Origin: Selaginella moellendorffii
Taxonomy: Eukaryota > Plantae > Lycopodiophyta
Direction of reading: 5' to 3'
NCBI RefSeq assembly: GCF_000143415.4
Contig: NW_003314271.1
Coordinates: forward strand, 620,001-684,000
Length of the DNA: 64,000 bases
The position numbers and the translations under genes are program-made. The notes under the pieces were generated by a model. The model was not told where the DNA came from. It ran no database searches and saw nothing but the letters and a program-made list of their open reading frames with translations. This document shows positions 3,707 through 64,000 of this stretch, in pieces (the stretch's first letter is position 1; each line of letters opens with the position of its first letter).

Positions 3707-4494
3707 CGCCCCGAGCTGCTGCCTTCCAGCCAGATTTTCACCTCATCTTCTCCCAGCTCCAGAAATCATGAGCCCACAACACTGGAGAAAATGGGGCCCC
3801 TGGGCGCGTGCCGGGGCCCCATCCGCTTGAATCTAGTGCCTGCTCCTCATTGCCGATCGAAGAACACACCCCCAGCTCGGGAATTTCGGCGGATTCTAAG
3901 CCGAATCGCGACCTACATTGCATCCTAGATCCAAGCCAGCTCCACAATCCATACCGGGGAGGAAGAACAGCGGCACCTCCTCGCGCGCCACGGCTCCAGC
4001 CCTAACCCTGCGGCACCCAGAGCTTCGAAGCCGGGAATATTCGTTGCCACTGTTGGAATATGCTCTGAAAGCGACCAAAGGTTGGAGCGCATTTCTTTCT
4101 TAACAGCTAGATGGCAACTGAGGATGTTGATGTGCTTATTCTTTTTACGATGCTTTTCTTTCGAGTTCATTCAATGCATCGCATGATAGATGGAACGATA
4201 GAAATTTGTTTAGATTGGTCGTGCTAGTTTTCTTTGGAAGAATATGACGATCACGATGTTCTTCCTGTTCTTCACTTGGAGGCGTGATGGCACGGTGCAA
4301 ATTATATCACGCAGAAGTAGAGATCGATCTATATATAACTTTCGTTTAGATTTCTCTTTCCGTATGTGCTGTAACTGGAGTGGGTGATGAGTAATTGGTT
4401 CCTGTAACGTTTTGAGAGATCTCTCTCCAAAATGCTTTCGCTCGCCAGTAAGTTGCTAAAATGTGCTGAGAGTTTGGAAGAACCTTGCCTTAGA

Positions 4495-6815
4495 TCACCA
4501 GATTGGCTGCTGGTGCTGGGGCGGAGGCAGCCACGATTCCATCTCTTCCTTGTGTATCATCCTGTTGTAGGTTTGAGTCTCTGCGTTCCAGCTGCAAATC
4601 GGGCACTCGTCACTCGGGGCACCCTGGAGGATCTGGCACAAACATCCCAAAGTTACTCGAGAGTTTCGAGGGAAAAAGGCAAGAGATAATAAACGAACCC
4701 TGAGAACACACTGCTCGCAAAACGCATGGTTGCATTCCAGGCGAATGGGATCCACGACGAGACCTGTAAAGTGAAAAACAAAAAGTGAAACGTTGGGACC
4801 GGTAATAAAGCGGAGTAACTTTTTACACTTACGAAAGCAGATGCAGCAGTTGCCAGAAGCGTCGTACTGTCCATTCGCAATCAACGATGAATTCGGAGGC
4901 AATCCCAAACTGTTTCGAAGCTGAGATTCCAGGAAACGCTTCTTCATCACTTCTGGATCGCTGTCAAACAGAATCATCTGATCTGAGTAAACGTTCACAG
5001 TACATATAAATTCTTGTACCAGTCACGGGTATAATCGAGAGGAAAGTCCGGTGAGAGCGGTTTAGTCAGGTATCCCCCTCCTAAACACAGAAGAACAAAA
5101 ATATTACGAACTAACACCAGAAAGAAGCTGCCAATCAAACCTCGAGGGAACACTTTGAGCTCTCGCAGTGGTACCGCCAAGTCCGGATCATTAAAGAACT
5201 GCTTCGTAGTATTCTCGGGTGAAAGTAGATCGGAAACGGCTTGCGCCTCCAATTTGGCACGAGTTTTGGCTCGGACCTCGGCCATTAGCATCTCAAGCTT
5301 CTTCATAGCCTTTTTTTCTTCCTCGAGTCTCCGATCCGCATCACTGCCTATAATGCTCGGAGCTGGATCACAGAGTGCACGGTCACATATCAGTCCTTGA
5401 GCCAAAAGAAAACAAATACTTAACGTTTAGCTTCTTCCTTGGCTGGATGAAGCAGTTTCTCCATCTGCTTCCTGTGAAGTCAAGTTTCATTAGGTTCGAG
5501 CTGGAGAAGAGACAATTTCAACAGGAGAATTTACGTACTTGTTCATAGGCTTGGATTTCTCGCGGTATGGTTTGACGAGCACCCGCGCACCACAGACATG
5601 GTGAGGATTTCCTTCGGCCAGAATCATCCTCACCGTCTCAGCGTACGTGAACGTCACAAACCCAAACATTCGCTTGTGCTGGGTTGGAATTCTCACGTCT
5701 TCCACGGGACCGTAAGCTCTGCACGGTAAAGTTTCGTATCGCTCCTCTTGTAACGAAGGAATTAAAGACAACGTACCGGAAGTGTGTCGCGACGTCCTCC
5801 TCGGAGAAATTGCTATCGCATGGAAACGTGAGATAGATTTGTCTGGAGCAAGGGCTTGGATCGTTACATTCGTCCAGATCCACCTTGTGAGCGCTGTATT
5901 TTGGAACATCCTCCGCGAGCATGAGAGCGTGCTGCCGATGGGGCCTGGGAAAGGAAAGAAAGAAGCGATAGAGATTGACGCTCGCAAAGGAGGAAGAAGA
6001 AAATGCCCCAAGCAAACAAGAAATTGCGAAGAATCGAGAAGGACTGGATGAAAACTAAGCTACGATTAGAGAAAGAAGCATACCTCGAAGCAGAAATGGC
6101 GCTAACAAGAAATGCGAAGAATCGAGAAGGAATGGATGAAAACTGTGAAAACTAAGCTACGATCGAAGAAAGAAGCATACCTCTCGACGACGGTGACGCT
6201 CTGGAACTTGCTAAGAAGCTTTGTGAGGGTGTAGCTCGGCTTCGCGTGGCGCTGGCTCTCGGAGACATAGCCATCGGCTTCCAGCCAGCGCCCATACTTC
6301 TCGAAGTAAATCTGCGGCAGCGAGGAGACGGAGATGGGAACGCCTTTGCGCGAGCGCAAGAGCTCCTGGAGCTGGAATTCCAGGCGCTCCATCGACAAGA
6401 ACTGATCTTTCGGCGGGGAATCCGACTGGAGCAGCGCGGAATCGTGGATGAAGCGGCAGCTGCTCCCGTTCTTGCAAAATCCCTTGGCAAAATACATGCA
6501 TGGCTTGGGGGGATCCTCGTCGGGCGCCGGAACCGCGATCTTGGCTGGAGCTTTGCTTCTGGAACCATTGGCCTTGGTAGCCGATGATCCACCGAACTCG
6601 CCGATGCCACCGATCGTTGCCAGATGATTCTCGTTGCAGAAGAGCTCCTTCTTGGCCTTGGCGACGGTCGATTTGAGCTCCGGATCCGTGCTAAAGGCGA
6701 GGCTAAACATATCCGAGTTCTTGAGCAGCAGATACCCCATCACTCGATTCACATTCTCCCCATCGATCGCCTTGACCCTGGCGAACACGATCTGAGCCGC
6801 CTCGCACGAATCCAT
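4495..6815 (-). CDS. CCCH zinc finger + OST-HTH/LOTUS + RRM protein with a spliced C-terminal C3HC4 RING finger
   Basis: N-terminus [35 protein letters not shown] finger ([19 protein letters not shown]), LOTUS-like segment ([27 protein letters not shown]), and RRM (RQIYLTFP...RMFGFVTF). Phase-matched ~60-nt GT-AG introns connect it to the RING ([24 protein letters not shown]...ECPIC). Confidence 0.8.
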
Positions 6816-59079: not shown

Positions 59080-60904
59080 ATGGATCACCCCAGGAAGAAT
59101 TTCACCCCAGCGGCCGCATTCGCGGCGTTTGGATTCGCGTGCGTCTCGCTAGGGCTTTATGTCGCGCTGCTTCCTCCGGAATATCTCGATCGCGGCTCTC
59201 TCCCTGCGGGATTGTGGGCGAGAGCTCCGGATCTCTCTTCCGCGGAGATCCTCTTGCGGCGGGTTGCTGAGAATGGGACGCAGGGATGCCACAACGTATC
59301 CACCGCAGCTGCTGTCTTGTTTGGGATTCCTCGAGCGGAGGATGGAGGCGAGATTACGCTGGCCGCGGATGAAGTTCACAAGTTCTGGATCGTTTCGTAT
59401 GCTGCCGATGGATCCAGGCGATGCTCGGGGGGAGATTTCTACGAGACCGACATCTCAGGTACTTTTCTTCGCGCTTTTCTTTCACAGATTAGAATTTTCA
59501 AGGCCAAGCTCTTTTGTTCTTGAGCTTGTTTCCTTCTTGTTTCTCTGGAAGTTGCTTGCTTTCTTTGCTAGCGTTTAGACTTCGTTTAGATTCCCGAGTC
59601 TCTCATTCCATCTTGTTTGATATGGTTTTCCTGATAGTACCTTGTGTGTGTGATTGCTCTTTCGCTGCAAATTCCTTCCATTGATTAAAACTTTCGATTG
59701 GTATCAAGCAGGTCCGACTTGGAAATCACGTCCACCGGTGACGGACTTGGGAGACGGCGCCTACCTGGTGGAACTCAAAGTCAATGGCGACTTCGCTAGA
59801 AGCTACAACTTCACGGTCAGTCTTGTCTACACGAACTTCCACGGGCTGGATCACGTCCCGAATAAGTGGGCCTTCAAGAAAGAGATGTTCCGCCTGCTCA
59901 TCAACTTCACGGCCGGGAGTCGTCGGCGTAAACACCAGCTCCACACTTGCGCCGCCAGCGACTTAAGATCGACGACTTCACCACCATCCCAATGGCAGGG
60001 AAGATGGTCCAGGACCAAATTCAACAGCTCATGTCAGCTAGACAAGAACGGCCGCTACCTTTGCTTGGATCCAGCCGAGCAGTGCGACGAGAGCCAGTGC
60101 TCCGGAGCCATCAACAGCCTGGAGAGCAACGGCTGGGTCTACTCCGCGCACTGCAAGTTTCGGATCTGGAACTCTGCTGAGGCCTGGCAGTGTCTCGACG
60201 GGAAGAAGCTCTTCTTTTGGGGGGACTCGAATCACCAAGACACCGTCCGGAACCTCCTCAACTTCGTCCTGGGACACCAGCTGAAATTCGTGGATAGGAT
60301 CTTCGTCGCCAACTTCACCAATCCAGCAAACCCGTCGCAGGTGGTCCGGCTGGCCTCGATTTTCAACGGGCACCCGGATCCACATCACAACTTCCTGGGC
60401 CTGGGATCGTTGTATGTTCCTCAGTACCGCGATTTCGTCCAGTCAGTAGTCCGCCAGGGTGGTATGCCGGACGCAGTGATCCTCAACTCGGGCATCCACG
60501 ACGGCATGAACTGGAAGACAATGGCGGAGTTCCTCGAGGCTGCCAGGAACGCGTCCGTGTTTTGGAAGGATTTGCTCGGGGACGAGAGCAAAGCTCGGGT
60601 GGTGTTTCGCTCCACGGTTGCTACCGGCCTCGGGTTTAGAGATCTGGGGTCCAATCCACACAAGATGGAAGCTTTCAATTCCATCCTGGGCGAGGAGCTC
60701 GCCAAGGAGCTCGGGGGCTTGGAGCACTTCATGTTCGTGGACGACTATGATATCACTTTCCCGTGGCACTATGATTTCTGCTGTAGCGATGGCGCTCACT
60801 TTGGACAGCCACCGGCCTTGAAGAATTGGTTTGATCGAATTGGACACTTTTACTTTGTGGATCTAATGCTTGTGCATATACTGCTCACTGCTATTTGCTC
60901 GTAA
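59080..60904 (+). CDS. Type-II membrane protein with an Ig/filamin-like segment and an SGNH/PC-esterase-like (GDS...DxxH) domain
   Basis: N-terminal TM (AAFAAFGFACVSLGLYVALL), GGDFYETDISG|PTWKSRPPVTDLGDGAY, FWGDSNHQD, NSGIHD, SDGAHF. Intron 59459-59711. Confidence 0.8.
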
Positions 60905-61099
60905 AACTATGGTCATCTTTCACTAAAAGGTTCATAGATAACACTTTTAAGATTCGAGATCAATAAAAATGAGAGATTTTTTGCTCATACTTGCATCTGT
61001 GATGAGGTAAATCACGCTTGGAATTCAAACTTTCCCTTCTTCAAGATGAGCTTGCATTTGTAACGCAAACTCTTCATCACGGCCCGTTTCTTAGTAATC

Positions 61100-61880
61100 G
61101 TCTTTACCATGGTTTTACTGTGCTGTATTTTCACAGCCTCTAGCAGCACCATGGTGAACGTGCCCCTGGTCACACCTCTCACTGAGTAGCTCCAGCGCGG
61201 TGACCACGTGGCCTCTCCCCAGCAGCCGCTTGACCACCTCTTGACTTGACTTTTTGATGGCCATGACTCGCGAGAGCCATGCCGACATCTTTGGGCCCTC
61301 ACGTAGCATGGCCTCAATACTCTCCGGGAATGCGCACCACCTTTTGCTCCTGAGCGCCACCTTGAGTGAATTTCCCTGTTTGCGATTCCCGCGTCATTTA
61401 GAAGCCCCGATTCCTTGACCAGAGCCATGGCATAGGCGTCTTGCGAATCTGGCCGCCACCTTTTCGCCGGGGTCGAGGCGCACGCCCGCGAGCTTGGCGC
61501 GCTTGAACAGCGAGAGGGCATCTTTCAGATGCGTGGTTCATTCGAAGAGCATCTGGTGCGCTTCCTCGGGATTGTCATGCAGATCTAGCACCGCGGCAAC
61601 TTTCTCCTCGTAGCCGCAAGCATTGTCGTGCTGGAAAGCGCCCGAGCAGTTCACTCGCATCAGCGTTGTTCGCCTTTGCTTCCATGTGGGCGAGATGGAA
61701 GAAGCTCACGGTGTAGTAGCGGATCAAAACCTTGTACACCTTGGGATCCAGTGCGCTGCTCGGGTGCTCCTCCAGCATTTGCCGGAAGAGCACCTTCACA
61801 GTCCAACGACAGCGTATGGGACGGCGCAATTCCAAGCGCCCCTTTGAAGAAGTCCCTCGTGTAACCCAGCGTTTTCATGG
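61100..61880 (-). pseudogene. Decayed PPR-like gene remnant
   Basis: Frameshifted fragments KVLFRQMLEEH...DPKVYKVLIRYY and DALSLFKRAKLAGVRLDP resemble PPR helices. No continuous ORF. Confidence 0.35.
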
Positions 61881-61913
61881 TACCGAGGTGACGACAGCGA
61901 GCGAGAAGTGGGA

Positions 61914-61972
61914 TGTGTGTGTGTGTGTGTGAGAAGAGAGAGAGAGAGAGCGAGAGAGAGCGAGAGAGAGAG
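61914..61972. repeat. Compound (GT)n(GA)n microsatellite
   Basis: Directly visible, immediately upstream of the E3 ligase gene. Confidence 0.95.
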
Positions 61973-62059
61973 ACTTTAGGGCACCAGGAAGTTTTGAGAG
62001 TTTTTAGGGCACCAGGGAGAGAGGTAGATTCATGGTTTTAATATTAGATTTTTTAGGGA

Positions 62060-64000
62060 ATGGAGATATGGAGGCTCGACGCCGCGGAGCCAATCGTCGA
62101 GCAGGTACTAGCGGCACAGCCATGGGAGGCGCTTCAGCGGCGTAAGCTATTCCTCCTCAATCACGTCGATGGCGAGATCGAGGACGAGGACGGCGACTGC
62201 GCCAATGGCTTCATCCTCGCCGATCCAATACCCTCGCCCTACCTCGGATCGCTGTACGTCGGCGCTTGCAGCGGCCGCAAGCACAAGCGCGAGATCGAGG
62301 TCGCCGATCGCCAGCCGGAGCACCAGATTCACGCCAGCGATGCGTGGTTCTGGTGTAATCTCTGCAACAAGGAGGTTTCTTTGGAATCCCTGGCGCTCGC
62401 GAGCTCCTCCGGGTGTTCTTGCCTCTTTTGCCGCGGCTGCCTGGAATCGGTGGTGTCCAGCGCGATCAAGGACGTTCTTCGCAGGAATCCTCCCCAGGTT
62501 TTGGATCCCGGCCCCAGCAGCAAGTCTCAATCGAAATGCCCCAAGCTGATGATCGATCTCACGAAGGATGACGACGATGGCGACGACGATTGTAGCATCG
62601 TTGGCGAGGTAGCGTCTTCTTCTTCGTTTTCTTCTTTGTGGGACTATCTCCCATGTCCGTCACCATTCTGCCGGGGGAAGTTCCGGCTTACAGACATCCA
62701 GTCCGTCTCTCCGGATTGTTTCGCCCAGTGGGAGGCAGCAGCGAGCGATGCTCTCGTCAAGAACAGTGGCTCCTTCGTCAAGTGTCCGGGTTGCCAGGTC
62801 GTGATCGAGAAAGTCGAGAGTGATTTGCCTCCGGGGCTGGCTCTTTCCGGGGTGCCGGAGTTTGACAGAACGGTTCCTTTCACCGAGCTCGACGACGATG
62901 GCAATCGTCTCTCTCGCCGCGCCATGGTGGACAAGGCCGTGAATCGCTTCCGGTGCGTGGTTTGCAGCATGGACTTTTGTGCTGCGTGCTTGCAACGCCC
63001 CTACCACCTGGGAAAGACTTGCGAGGAGTTCTCGCTCGAGAAGAAGGCTCTGCGGTGCATCTACTGCCATCAAGTGTGTCGGCACGAGATCAAGTCGCTC
63101 GTCGGTGGGAATGATGTTGAGAGTTCTTCGGTGAAGGATATACGAAGTCGGCTTGAGCAGGAAGGGGTGGACAGTGGATGGTGCGTGGAGAAAAGTGATC
63201 TTGTCGCGGTGGAGAGGTTGTGCGATCGTGTCTGCCAGGAAATGGAGTGTAGGCAACGGTTGAAACAAGCTTGCACGCGCAACTTACACTGCGGACACCA
63301 CTGCTGTGGAGTGAGAGGTGAACGAAATTGCCTACCTTGTCTAGAGGTACCTTGTTAGGATTGCCTTGTGTCCTTGTGTGTTCTTCCTCGGTTTTATGCT
63401 TTTGGTGGTGGTGGATGCTTCCTTCTTGACGTTCATTTTTCTTCGTGTTTGTTTCCTTGCTTCGAGTTCGTTGAGCTCCTGATTTTGTTTTGTGCTGATG
63501 TAAACGACTGTTTTTTCTTCGTTTATCTCCTCGTCTCCAGTTTTTCATGAATCTATTTCACTTTCTTTTTTGGCAAAATAGTTCACACTCTCTACTTCTT
63601 CCTATACAGGAGGAATGCCAGAAGCAGAAGCTCTCGGGAAAGGCATTGGCGTCTGCTGATGACTTTTGTGGCATTTGCTTGGTGGAGGCGCTTCGTTCGG
63701 CCCCTTCAATTCTGCTTCAGTGTGGCCACATTGTGCACTTGCATTGTGCCAAGCGACAAATCCAGCAGGGATGTCCTGGCCCTCAAATCTCATTCGGGTA
63801 TTTAAAGTGCCCCCAGTGCAAGCTTCTTATGAAGCACAGTAAGCTGGACGCGGACATGCACAAGCATTTGACGACAATGGGCCAGGTAAGCAACACGCTG
63901 GTTTTAAACTTCTTGGAACTCTTTCATTGTTGCGTTTGCAGATCAAAGCCAGAGCAATCAAACGTTTGAAACTGGAAGGAGTTTATGACAAGCTCAAGGC
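62060..64000 (+). CDS. Multi-zinc-finger E3 ubiquitin ligase: RING1/IBR-like N-terminal part plus a MYCBP2/Highwire/RPM-1-type RING-H2 (truncated by the window end)
   Basis: Exons 62060-63346, 63610-63885 and 63942-end. Contains CGHHCCGVRGERNCLPCL, DDFCGICLVEALRSAPSILLQCGHIVHLHC...PGPQISFGYLKCPQCK and IKARAIKRLKLEG. Confidence 0.82.

What the first reader, a model, noticed from the sequence alone, without database searches (positions are those of the whole stretch)
62060..64000. Plant gene with a MYCBP2/Highwire-type RING: candidate RING-Cys-relay ligase fused to RBR-like zinc modules
Seen: RCIYC...VCQEMECRQRLKQACTRNLHCGHHCCGVRGERNCLPCL...DDFCGICLVEALRSAPSILLQCGHIVHLHC...GPQISFGYLKCPQCK...ARAIKRLKLEG. 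From memory this parallels the C-terminal region of animal MYCBP2 (CGHPCGGV..EEHCLPCL..DDMCMICFTEAL..APAIQLDC.H.FHLQC..GPRITFGF..CP.CK..KAL.RLEYEG). Established: in MYCBP2 this RING is followed by a tandem-cysteine domain that relays ubiquitin and esterifies threonine, and PHR ligases are studied in animal neurons. Here it is preceded not by RCC1/PHR domains but by a RING1-like (CNLC...CLFCRGC...CPSPFC) and an IBR-like (CPGC...CVVC...FCAAC..PYH) module. Inference: a compact RBR/RCR hybrid, implying possible non-lysine ubiquitination in a plant.
Basis: partly seen in the sequence, partly recalled or inferred. Interest (0 to 1): 0.8.

Follow-up and report, generated by a model that had tools for sequence, protein, structure and literature searches.

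The report
Plant RING-Cys-relay ligase with RBR-like head
A spikemoss (Selaginella) gene encodes a 689-residue ubiquitin ligase that joins the first two zinc modules of an RBR ligase to a complete copy of the two-cysteine "relay" machinery so far studied only in the giant animal neuronal protein MYCBP2, and it belongs to a large, apparently unstudied family found across eukaryotes but not seen in seed plants.

Summary

- **The gene.** The window is Selaginella moellendorffii scaffold GL377575.1. The gene is LOC9631257 (XP_002968113.2, 689 aa, "uncharacterized"). Three exons lie in the window; the gene ends 506 bases beyond it.
- **The RING.** Exon 2 matches the MYCBP2 RING at E 1e-16. The next best RING scores 0.01.
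- **The catalytic domain.** The tandem-cysteine domain lies beyond the window edge and is intact. The C-terminal 290 aa of the near-identical allele match the MYCBP2 RCR crystal structures at E 7e-56. The fold match is Z 13.3. Both relay cysteines (C576, C630) and the active-site His (H641) are present and nearly invariant in about 180 relatives.
- **The N-terminal half.** It is a genuine RBR-type RING1 plus IBR. The profile matches HOIP and RNF144A at E 4e-8, and every fold hit is an RBR ligase. There is no RING2/Rcat.
- **Expression.** The gene is transcribed and spliced as modelled. An out-of-frame alternative donor is also used.
- **The family.** It is not a MYCBP2 orthologue. It belongs to a large eukaryote-wide RING1-IBR-RCR family (986 representatives at E 1e-30 or better). 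Green-lineage members form one clade.
- **Prior knowledge.** No seed-plant member and no paper on the family were found. Some databases auto-label relatives "highwire-like" or "RCR-type".
- **Not shown.** Activity and hydroxyl (non-lysine) specificity are inferred only.

Earlier scan notes cover only this same stretch.

The parts
62060..63346 (+). Exon 1 (aa 1-429) of LOC9631257, starting at the ATG at 62060.
   Evidence: ORF. 429/429 identical to XP_002968113.2. Transcript contigs cover 62100-63318/63347.
62165..62227 (+). Conserved acidic N-terminal motif VDGEIEDEDGDxAxxFIxADP (aa 36-56). Function unknown.
   Evidence: Conserved in all embryophyte homologues in alignment A1. Coordinates.
62354..62671 (+). 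RBR-type RING1 (aa 99-204). Zinc ligands are C99, C102, C119, C121, C124, C127, C199 and C204. A disordered acidic insert lies between the sixth and seventh ligand.
   Evidence: Profile A3 vs PDB: RNF144A RING1 4e-8, HOIP RBR 4e-8, HOIL-1, ARIH2, CUL9. VIA Z 9.2 to RNF144A RING1, 91 of 94 residues aligned.
62783..63022 (+). IBR domain (aa 242-321). Ligands are C242, C245, C299, C302, C307, C310, H316 and C321, all invariant in the family. A long conserved insert (GVPExDRTxPFTE..PLSR) lies between the first and second zinc-binding halves.
   Evidence: Pfam IBR_1 at aa 288-322, E 0.008. Pfam IBR above its cutoff in family member P0020. HOIP IBR stretch matched by the profile. RING1-IBR spans of HOIL-1, RNF216 and ARIH2 at Z 7.4-7.7. 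Invariant columns.
63056..63067 (+). Invariant CxxC (C333, C336) directly after the IBR. PHR-like proteins share it.
   Evidence: Invariant in A1. Present as CRFC upstream of the knuckle in P0018, P0189 and P0190.
63095..63211 (+). Land-plant-specific insert (aa 346-384, SVKDIRSRLEQEGVDSGWCVEKSDLVAV). Absent from protist relatives.
   Evidence: Alignment A1, columns 650-690. No PDB sequence match.
63233..63618 (+). Pre-RING zinc knuckle (aa 392-432, C-x4-C-x7-C-x5-CGHxC-x8-CLPC-x4-C). It spans intron 1, and its last Cys is in exon 2.
   Evidence: Seven Cys invariant in the family. pLDDT 86-94 in the model. The same motif is in PHR-like P0018, P0189 and P0190.
63347..63609 (+). Intron 1 (263 nt, GT..AG, phase 0). 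An alternative out-of-frame donor lies at 63318.
   Evidence: Joints 63346|63610 and 63317|63610 in contigs of public runs. The frame consequence was computed.
63610..63885 (+). Exon 2 (aa 430-521).
   Evidence: 92/92 identical to XP_002968113.2. Transcript contigs cover it.
63667..63819 (+). MYCBP2-type RING (aa 449-499). Ligands are C449, C452, C467, H469, H472, C475, C496 and C499.
   Evidence: E 1e-16 to MYCBP2 RING in PDB against 0.01 for the next RING. All eight ligands invariant.
63886..63941 (+). Intron 2 (56 nt, GT..AG, phase 0).
   Evidence: Joint 63885|63942 in all four runs.
63942..64000 (+). Start of exon 3 (aa 522-540, the linker helix after the RING), cut by the window end. The gene continues to window-equivalent 64506: exon 3 runs to 64120, intron 3 is 64121-64178, exon 4 is 64179-64506. 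That stretch carries the tandem-cysteine domain with C576 (64104) and C630 (64324).
   Evidence: L002 is identical to the window over 6941 bases and continues it. Exon structure reproduces P0024 exactly.

Best explanation
The window holds the 5' three quarters of Selaginella moellendorffii LOC9631257, an expressed gene for a 689-aa transthiolating ubiquitin E3 ligase.

Domain order: RBR-type RING1, IBR, CxxC, a plant-specific insert, a pre-RING zinc knuckle, a MYCBP2-type RING, a linker helix with a helix-turn-helix, and a tandem-cysteine (TC) domain.

Most likely mechanism, inferred by homology with the MYCBP2 RCR module:
1. The C-terminal RING docks a ubiquitin-charged E2.
2. Ubiquitin passes as a thioester to C576, which sits on a flexible mediator loop.
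3. It is relayed to C630 in the zinc-bound TC core.
4. It is discharged onto a substrate nucleophile with the help of H641 and E592. The aromatic pocket (F631, F636) that favours threonine/serine hydroxyl groups in MYCBP2 is kept, so the acceptor is probably a hydroxyl group.

The RING1-IBR head has no catalytic RING2. It most likely serves as a second E2~ubiquitin or ubiquitin docking and regulatory module. This step is the least certain.

The gene is not a MYCBP2 orthologue. It is the green-lineage member of an ancient family spread across eukaryotes that shares the RING1-IBR-RCR architecture.
For: Identity and structure of the gene:
- Searches give the gene identity, exon structure and continuation beyond the window.

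RCR module:
- Residues 400-689 of the allele P0001 (99% identical to the window's protein) match PDB 5o6c/6t7f at E 7e-56 over chain positions 8-259 of 263. C, E, C, F, F and H align to human C4520, E4534, C4572, F4573, F4578 and H4583.
- Chain numbering is confirmed by VIA chain_range 4379-4630.
- C4520S is a published catalytically dead MYCBP2 mutant (PMC12664034).
- Fold: Foldseek E 1.8e-18 to 5o6c, with only the two RCR entries at E 0.001 or better. VIA Z 13.3 with 195 residues aligned, next 4.3.
- The mediator loop is low-confidence in the model, as expected for a flexible loop.

Family-wide constraint:
- Upstream Cys 187/190, downstream Cys 180/181, His 175/177, Glu/Asp 159/186, aromatic after the second Cys 169/181.

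RING1-IBR head:
-, and Pfam IBR above its cutoff in family member P0020.

Architecture and size of the family:
- 179 of 192 held family proteins have the RING1-IBR module upstream of the RCR.
- 986 representatives at E 1e-30 or better.

Expression:
- Spliced contigs in four runs from four studies.

Vertical descent:
- Embryophytes form one clade (99/94) that is sister to the green alga Cymbomonas (100/98). PHR-like proteins lie apart (85/95).
Against: - No biochemical data exist for any member of this family. Thioester relay and hydroxyl selectivity are extrapolated from one animal enzyme.
- The position aligned to human F4586 is variable in the family. It is W644 in Selaginella and often Q, R or A elsewhere.
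- The Glu is D, H or Q in about 40% of relatives, so chemoselectivity may differ.
- The AF2 models are of moderate confidence (pLDDT 73-74). The whole-module superposition has a large rmsd (8.3 A), which reflects uncertain domain orientation.
- An out-of-frame alternative donor has contig depth as high as the productive junction or higher. A large share of transcripts may therefore not encode the RCR part.
- Allele comparison shows only weak purifying signal: 9 nonsynonymous against 5 synonymous codon differences.
Confidence: 0.8

Rival explanations
1. It is a working relay ligase, but the RBR-type RING1-IBR is the main entry point. RING1 binds the E2~ubiquitin in the open RBR manner and hands ubiquitin to the mediator-loop Cys576, so that the RING-TC unit plays the part of the missing RING2/Rcat. 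The family would then be an RBR whose catalytic domain was replaced.
For: - RING1 and IBR are conserved with all zinc ligands in embryophytes. They are kept upstream of the RCR in 179 of 192 relatives.
- RBR-specific profile and fold matches.
- The CxxC right after the IBR sits where an Rcat would begin.
Against: - The C-terminal RING keeps all eight ligands and the MYCBP2-like sequence. In MYCBP2 this RING alone suffices with the TC domain (5o6c/6t7f constructs).
- Some family members have degenerate RING1 ligands (P0012, P0020 and P0015).
- PHR-like proteins work without RING1-IBR.
Confidence: 0.2
2. It is an ordinary RING E3 that activates E2~ubiquitin for direct transfer to lysine. On this reading the TC region is only a structural or substrate-binding zinc domain and the conserved cysteines are zinc ligands.
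For: - Pfam sees only a sub-threshold zf-RING_2 hit in the whole protein.
- The TC domain is very rich in Cys and His, so a given conserved Cys could be structural.
Against: - The two cysteines align exactly with the two non-ligand catalytic cysteines of the solved MYCBP2 structure.
- They are as invariant as the ligands, and so is the catalytic His.
- The upstream Cys lies in a loop that the model leaves disordered, as in MYCBP2.
Confidence: 0.08
3. The locus mainly yields a truncated RING1-IBR protein of about 435 aa through the out-of-frame alternative donor, or an NMD-targeted transcript. The full-length RCR protein would be a minor product, and the truncated form would act as a regulator or decoy.
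For: The joint 63317|63610 is seen in all four runs, with contig depths of 49.6, 276.8, 47.3 and 10. The annotated joint has 38.1, 155.6, 0 and 5.6. The predicted stop is at codon 436.
Against: - Contig depth is a poor measure of isoform abundance (tool caveat).
- The full reading frame is intact in both haplotypes.
- The C-terminal half is the most conserved part across plants and protists. That would not hold if it were rarely made.
Confidence: 0.15

Closest known systems
MYCBP2 / PAM / Highwire / RPM-1 RCR module (human residues ~4378-4640; PDB 5O6C, 6T7F)
   Same: - The RING, linker helix, helix-turn-helix and tandem-cysteine domain align end to end (E 7e-56, about 37-39% identity, Z 13.3).
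- Both relay cysteines, the His, the Glu and two of the three pocket phenylalanines are conserved.
- The CxxC plus CGHxCxGVRGExxCLPCL knuckle before the RING is also shared with PHR-like proteins.
   Different: - It is 689 aa rather than about 4,600 aa.
- It has no RCC1-like, PHR, DOC, B-box or Myc-binding regions.
- An RBR-type RING1-IBR sits in their place.
- It falls in a separate clade from PHR-like sequences.
- The third pocket position is Trp, not Phe.
- It occurs in plants and protists, not in neurons.
RBR ligases (RNF144A, HOIP/RNF31, HOIL-1, ARIH1/2, RNF216, parkin)
   Same: - The RING1 has the RBR-specific C-x-C/H-x2-C-x2-C core and a terminal CPxxxC pair, followed by a helix and an IBR with the FCxxCxxxxxH(x4)C signature.
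- The profile E-value is 4e-8 and the fold Z is 7-9.
   Different: - There is no RING2/Rcat and no RBR catalytic cysteine.
- The IBR carries a conserved insert of about 50 residues.
- Catalysis is expected from the RCR module instead.
Auto-annotated relatives: Physcomitrium patens XP_024395653.1 ('E3 ubiquitin-protein ligase highwire-like'), Anaeramoeba and Cavenderia 'RCR-type E3 ubiquitin transferase', Dictyostelium DDB_G0284853 ('mycBP2/Highwire-like', PMC6743453)
   Same: The named moss, Anaeramoeba and Cavenderia proteins belong to the same family and have the same architecture. The Dictyostelium protein is known here only from its TC-motif peptide quoted in the paper.
   Different: These are database labels or a passing mention. 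No paper found describes the architecture, the catalytic residues or any activity.

Membership tests
RING-Cys-relay (RCR) E3 ligases | RING domain of the MYCBP2 type with eight zinc ligands | tested here: met
   E 1e-16 to MYCBP2 RING against 0.01 for the next RING. All eight ligands are invariant in the family.
RING-Cys-relay (RCR) E3 ligases | Linker helix and helix-turn-helix between RING and TC, followed by a tandem-cysteine zinc domain | tested here: met
   The alignment to 5o6c is continuous over chain positions 8-259. Model helices at 122-148, 152-158 and 162-172 are followed by a zinc-rich domain. Z 13.3 over 195 residues. The TC part lies outside the window but in the same gene.
RING-Cys-relay (RCR) E3 ligases | Upstream catalytic cysteine on a flexible mediator loop (human C4520) | tested here: met
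   C576 aligns to chain position 143 = C4520. It is Cys in 187 of 190 relatives. The loop has pLDDT below 50.
RING-Cys-relay (RCR) E3 ligases | Downstream catalytic cysteine with His/Glu and an aromatic pocket (human C4572, H4583, E4534, F4573, F4578, F4586; residue roles recalled from Pao et al. 2018, a paper not held here) | tested here: met
   C630, H641, E592, F631 and F636 are conserved, and W644 replaces F4586. In the family the Cys is 180/181 and the His 175/177. The Glu and the last aromatic position are variable.
RING-Cys-relay (RCR) E3 ligases | Demonstrated thioester relay and esterification of Thr/Ser | not testable with these tools
   This needs biochemistry. No data exist for any non-animal member.
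[quoted passage not shown] | Giant protein with RCC1-like, PHR, DOC/APC10 and B-box regions upstream of the RCR | tested here: not met
   The protein is 689 aa. Pfam finds only sub-threshold RING hits in P0024. PHR-like P0018 shows ANAPC10 and B-box, and P0190 shows SPRY. The tree separates PHR-like proteins from this family (85/95).
RBR (RING-between-RING) ligases | RING1 of the RBR type | tested here: met
RBR (RING-between-RING) ligases | IBR domain | tested here: met
   Pfam IBR_1 at E 0.008 here. Pfam IBR at 30.3 bits, above the 24.3 cutoff, in family member P0020. HOIP IBR stretch matched. Fold spans RING1-IBR.
RBR (RING-between-RING) ligases | RING2/Rcat with the catalytic cysteine | tested here: not met
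   After the IBR there is only an invariant CxxC, then the knuckle and a canonical cross-brace RING. No Rcat match appears in the Pfam or PDB profile searches.

The most novel reading that the evidence does not exclude
RCR ligases are not an animal neuronal oddity. They are an ancient class spread across eukaryotes, and their commonest form is a compact RING1-IBR-RCR enzyme.

In this form an RBR-type E2~ubiquitin docking head feeds, or allosterically controls, a two-cysteine relay that esterifies hydroxyl groups.

Non-seed land plants (mosses, lycophytes, ferns) keep this enzyme and seed plants lost it. Ester-linked, non-lysine ubiquitination would then be a native plant and protist activity. 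The RCR module and RBRs would also share an evolutionary origin.
Probability: 0.3. Interest if true: 0.8.

Novelty: new variant of a known kind. Interest (0 to 1): 0.66.

Why it matters
The RING-Cys-relay mechanism is treated in the literature as a class with a single studied member, the animal protein MYCBP2.

This gene shows that the complete catalytic module, with its active-site residues under strong conservation, exists in a small protein of land plants and in hundreds of protist lineages. There it is fused to an RBR-type RING1-IBR head.

That has four consequences:
1. It provides small, tractable RCR enzymes of about 70 kDa for biochemistry and structure.
2. It provides a genetically easy model, Physcomitrium patens, for asking what hydroxyl-directed ubiquitination does outside neurons.
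3. It gives a natural experiment on how RBR and RCR parts cooperate.
4. It raises an evolutionary question: why is the gene absent from all seed-plant proteomes searched?

Tried and rejected
- **Pfam** on the window exons and on the full protein gave only sub-threshold RING and IBR hits. Pfam has no model for the TC domain, so it leaves about 90% of the protein unannotated.
- **Single-sequence PDB search** of exon 1 gave only marginal RNF144A hits (E 0.1). A family profile was needed.
- **Pao 2018 and Mabbitt 2020** are not held in the library. Residue roles other than C4520 therefore rest on my memory of those papers. C4520 itself is confirmed as the catalytic mutant site in PMC12664034.
- **One paper search** was badly posed and returned nothing relevant.
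- **Human MYCBP2 upstream of residue 4378** could not be obtained. The pre-RING knuckle was compared with PHR-like proteins of unknown or protist origin instead.
- **The plant-specific insert** (aa 338-395) has no PDB sequence match. I had suspected a SAP-like motif, and this is untested.
- **Minus-strand ORF debris** at 61012-61880 has no Pfam hit.
- **Horizontal transfer from animals** is rejected, because the green-lineage sequences form one clade nested among protist RING1-IBR-RCR proteins.
- **A pseudogene or unexpressed model** is rejected, because the frames are intact in both haplotypes and spliced transcripts exist.
Full report
**What is in the window.**

The + strand from 62060 carries an ATG-initiated ORF of 429 codons that ends at a GT donor (63347). 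Two further exons follow, at 63610-63885 and from 63942 to the window end.

Exons 1 and 2 are 100% identical to RefSeq XP_002968113.2 (P0024). This is "uncharacterized protein LOC9631257" of Selaginella moellendorffii, 689 aa.

The fetched locus L002 comes from GL377575.1 of GCA_000143415.2. It is identical to the window over 6941 bases and continues it. The gene ends at window-equivalent 64506. Exon 3 runs to 64120, a 58-nt intron follows, and exon 4 covers 64179-64506.

A second copy, LOC9631788 (P0001), is 680/689 identical. It has the same neighbours, a poly(A) polymerase gene and a 524-aa gene, and is the other haplotype.

**The MYCBP2 resemblance is real and specific.**

- Exon 2 alone, searched against all PDB sequences, finds the two MYCBP2 RCR entries at E 1e-16. 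The next RING domain scores 0.01.
- Residues 400-689 of the allele P0001 match 5o6c and 6t7f at E 7e-56 over chain positions 8-259 of 263. That covers the RING, linker helix, helix-turn-helix and the whole tandem-cysteine (TC) domain. The window's own protein P0024 differs from P0001 at 9 of 689 residues.
- With the entry's numbering (chain range 4379-4630), the alignment pairs the residues as follows:

| Human MYCBP2 | Selaginella |
|---|---|
| C4520 | C576 |
| E4534 | E592 |
| C4572 | C630 |
| F4573 | F631 |
| F4578 | F636 |
| H4583 | H641 |
| F4586 | W644 |

- C4520S is used in the literature as the catalytically dead MYCBP2 (PMC12664034). The roles of the other residues are recalled from Pao et al. 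2018, which the library does not hold.
- An AlphaFold2 model of aa 385-689 has pLDDT 74, and the mediator loop is disordered, as expected. Foldseek finds only the two RCR structures at E 0.001 or better (1.8e-18). VIA gives Z 13.3 with 195 residues aligned, and the next hit is Z 4.3.

It is not met. The TC domain lies outside the 64000-base window, so this rests on the continuation of the same scaffold.

**The N-terminal half is two thirds of an RBR.**

- A profile of aa 90-345 and its homologues (A3) hits RBR ligases specifically in the PDB. HOIP scores 4e-8, with separate RING1 and IBR stretches. RNF144A RING1 scores 4e-8. HOIL-1, ARIH2 and CUL9 follow.
- The model of this part has pLDDT 73. 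All 50 listed structural matches are RBR ligases. RNF144A RING1 gives Z 9.2, and the RING1-IBR spans of RNF216, ARIH2 and HOIL-1 give Z 7.4-7.7.
- One family member passes Pfam's IBR cutoff.
- RING1 uses C99, C102, C119, C121, C124, C127, C199 and C204.
- The IBR uses C242, C245, C299, C302, C307, C310, H316 and C321, all invariant in the family.
- After the IBR comes only an invariant CxxC. There is no Rcat. The protein is therefore not an RBR, although it contains RBR parts.

**Between the two halves.**

A 39-residue insert (aa 346-384) is found only in land plants. A cysteine-rich knuckle (aa 392-432) follows it and is invariant in the family.

The CxxC and the knuckle are also present in PHR-like proteins. 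In P0018 the knuckle reads CGHPCGGVRGEKQCLPCL, and that protein carries DOC and B-box domains. P0190 carries SPRY. Human MYCBP2 upstream of residue 4378 was not available to me.

**The gene is expressed.**

In four public runs from four studies, contigs join 63346|63610 (three runs) and 63885|63942 (all four runs) at GT..AG borders.

A second joint, 63317|63610, uses a donor 29 nt upstream and appears in all four runs. Its contig depth equals or exceeds that of the annotated joint. It shifts the frame and would end the protein at residue 435, before the RING. Contig depth is a poor measure of abundance, so this is recorded as an observation to follow up.

**It is a member of a large, old family, not a plant curiosity and not a MYCBP2 orthologue.**

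- An exhaustive profile search of 1.84 billion representatives found 986 proteins at E 1e-30 or better. The best 150 all score above 395 bits, and most cover the profile from RING1 to the C-terminus.
- Conservation at the aligned catalytic columns:

| Position | Conserved in |
|---|---|
| Upstream Cys | 187/190 |
| Downstream Cys | 180/181 |
| His | 175/177 |
| Glu or Asp | 159/186 |
| Aromatic after the second Cys | 169/181 |

- Named plant members come from the lycophytes Selaginella and Diphasiastrum, the mosses Ceratodon, Physcomitrium and Sphagnum, and the ferns Pteridium, Psilotum, Ceratopteris and Adiantum. The green alga Cymbomonas also has one.
- Named protist members come from Physarum, Protostelium, Cavenderia, Anaeramoeba, Hemistasia and Platysulcus.
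- No seed plant appeared in three word-based searches of a collection that includes NCBI nr and UniRef. This is evidence for loss but not proof, because the searches are limited by length and by shared words.
- A tree of the RCR modules puts embryophytes in one clade (99/94) that is sister to Cymbomonas (100/98). PHR-like sequences, including a sponge MYCBP2-like protein, lie apart (85/95).
- Descent in the green lineage is therefore vertical.
- The stramenopile Platysulcus has both types. Both architectures are thus older than animals.

**Mechanism.**

Shown here: the domain content, the conservation of the relay cysteines and the His, the fold similarity, and transcription.

Inferred by homology:
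1. E2~ubiquitin docks on the C-terminal RING.
2. Transthiolation passes ubiquitin to C576.
3. Ubiquitin is relayed to C630.
4. Ubiquitin is discharged, probably to a hydroxyl group.

The role of RING1-IBR is open. I favour a second docking or regulatory module. A rival reading has it as the true E2~ubiquitin entry point, with the RING-TC unit replacing Rcat.

Caveats: the third pocket position and the Glu vary in the family, so chemoselectivity may differ. The models have moderate confidence. The allele comparison gives only weak selection signal, with 9 nonsynonymous against 5 synonymous codon differences, although coding DNA is four times less diverged than the introns.

**What is known.**

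In the held library, 71 papers mention RING-Cys-relay, and none of the 40 listed deals with a non-animal enzyme.

One Dictyostelium paper mentions in passing a "mycBP2/Highwire-like protein", DDB_G0284853, with the TC-motif peptide CFGTTHFCDTCHD (PMC6743453).

Databases auto-label some relatives "highwire-like", "MYCBP2" or "RCR-type E3 ubiquitin transferase". The Selaginella protein is "uncharacterized".

The similarity is therefore visible in annotation. The architecture, its breadth across eukaryotes and its presence in non-seed plants appear to be unstudied. Subscription journals are largely missing from the library, so a prior description cannot be excluded.

**Verdict.**

I file this as a new variant of a known kind: an RCR ligase with an RBR-type head, in plants. 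The earlier scan notes found all concern this same stretch, and none was found on other DNA.

Noticed in passing
window 63318 (alternative donor) joined to 63610: An alternative GT donor lies 29 nt upstream of the annotated one and is used in all four runs. Its contig depth is as high as the annotated junction or higher. It shifts the frame and predicts a 435-aa RING1-IBR product without the RING or TC domain, or an NMD target. Low-depth contigs also retain intron 1.
   Followed up: partly
window 63095-63211 (aa 346-384): A land-plant-specific insert with a conserved motif (S-V/I-K-D/E-L..L..E.VD..WCVEK..L..V) lies between the CxxC and the knuckle. It is absent from protist relatives and has no PDB sequence match.
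   Followed up: partly
window 61905-61978: A compound (GT)n(GA)n microsatellite lies about 80-150 bases upstream of the start codon. The read tool skipped it as a repeat.
   Followed up: no
window 61012-61880, minus strand: Several overlapping ORFs of 70-170 aa in different frames lie in the intergenic space, and none has a Pfam hit. They may be debris of a decayed gene or chance ORFs in GC-rich DNA.
   Followed up: partly
window 59080-60904, + strand: The upstream neighbour encodes a 524-aa protein with only a weak NXPE4_C-like hit (E 2e-4, below cutoff). A poly(A) polymerase gene lies further upstream on the minus strand. Both neighbours are syntenic in the other haplotype (L001).
   Followed up: no
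P0190 and P0049 (Platysulcus tardus, EukProt): One stramenopile encodes both a PHR-like protein (SPRY ... B-box-like ... knuckle-RING-TC, 1516 aa) and a RING1-IBR-RCR protein. PHR-like C-terminal halves therefore also exist outside animals.
   Followed up: partly
ESM Atlas clusters: A diatom-rich cluster combines an FBA (F-box-associated) domain with a RING and aligns structurally to aa 439-689. This hints at further RCR architectures.
   Followed up: no
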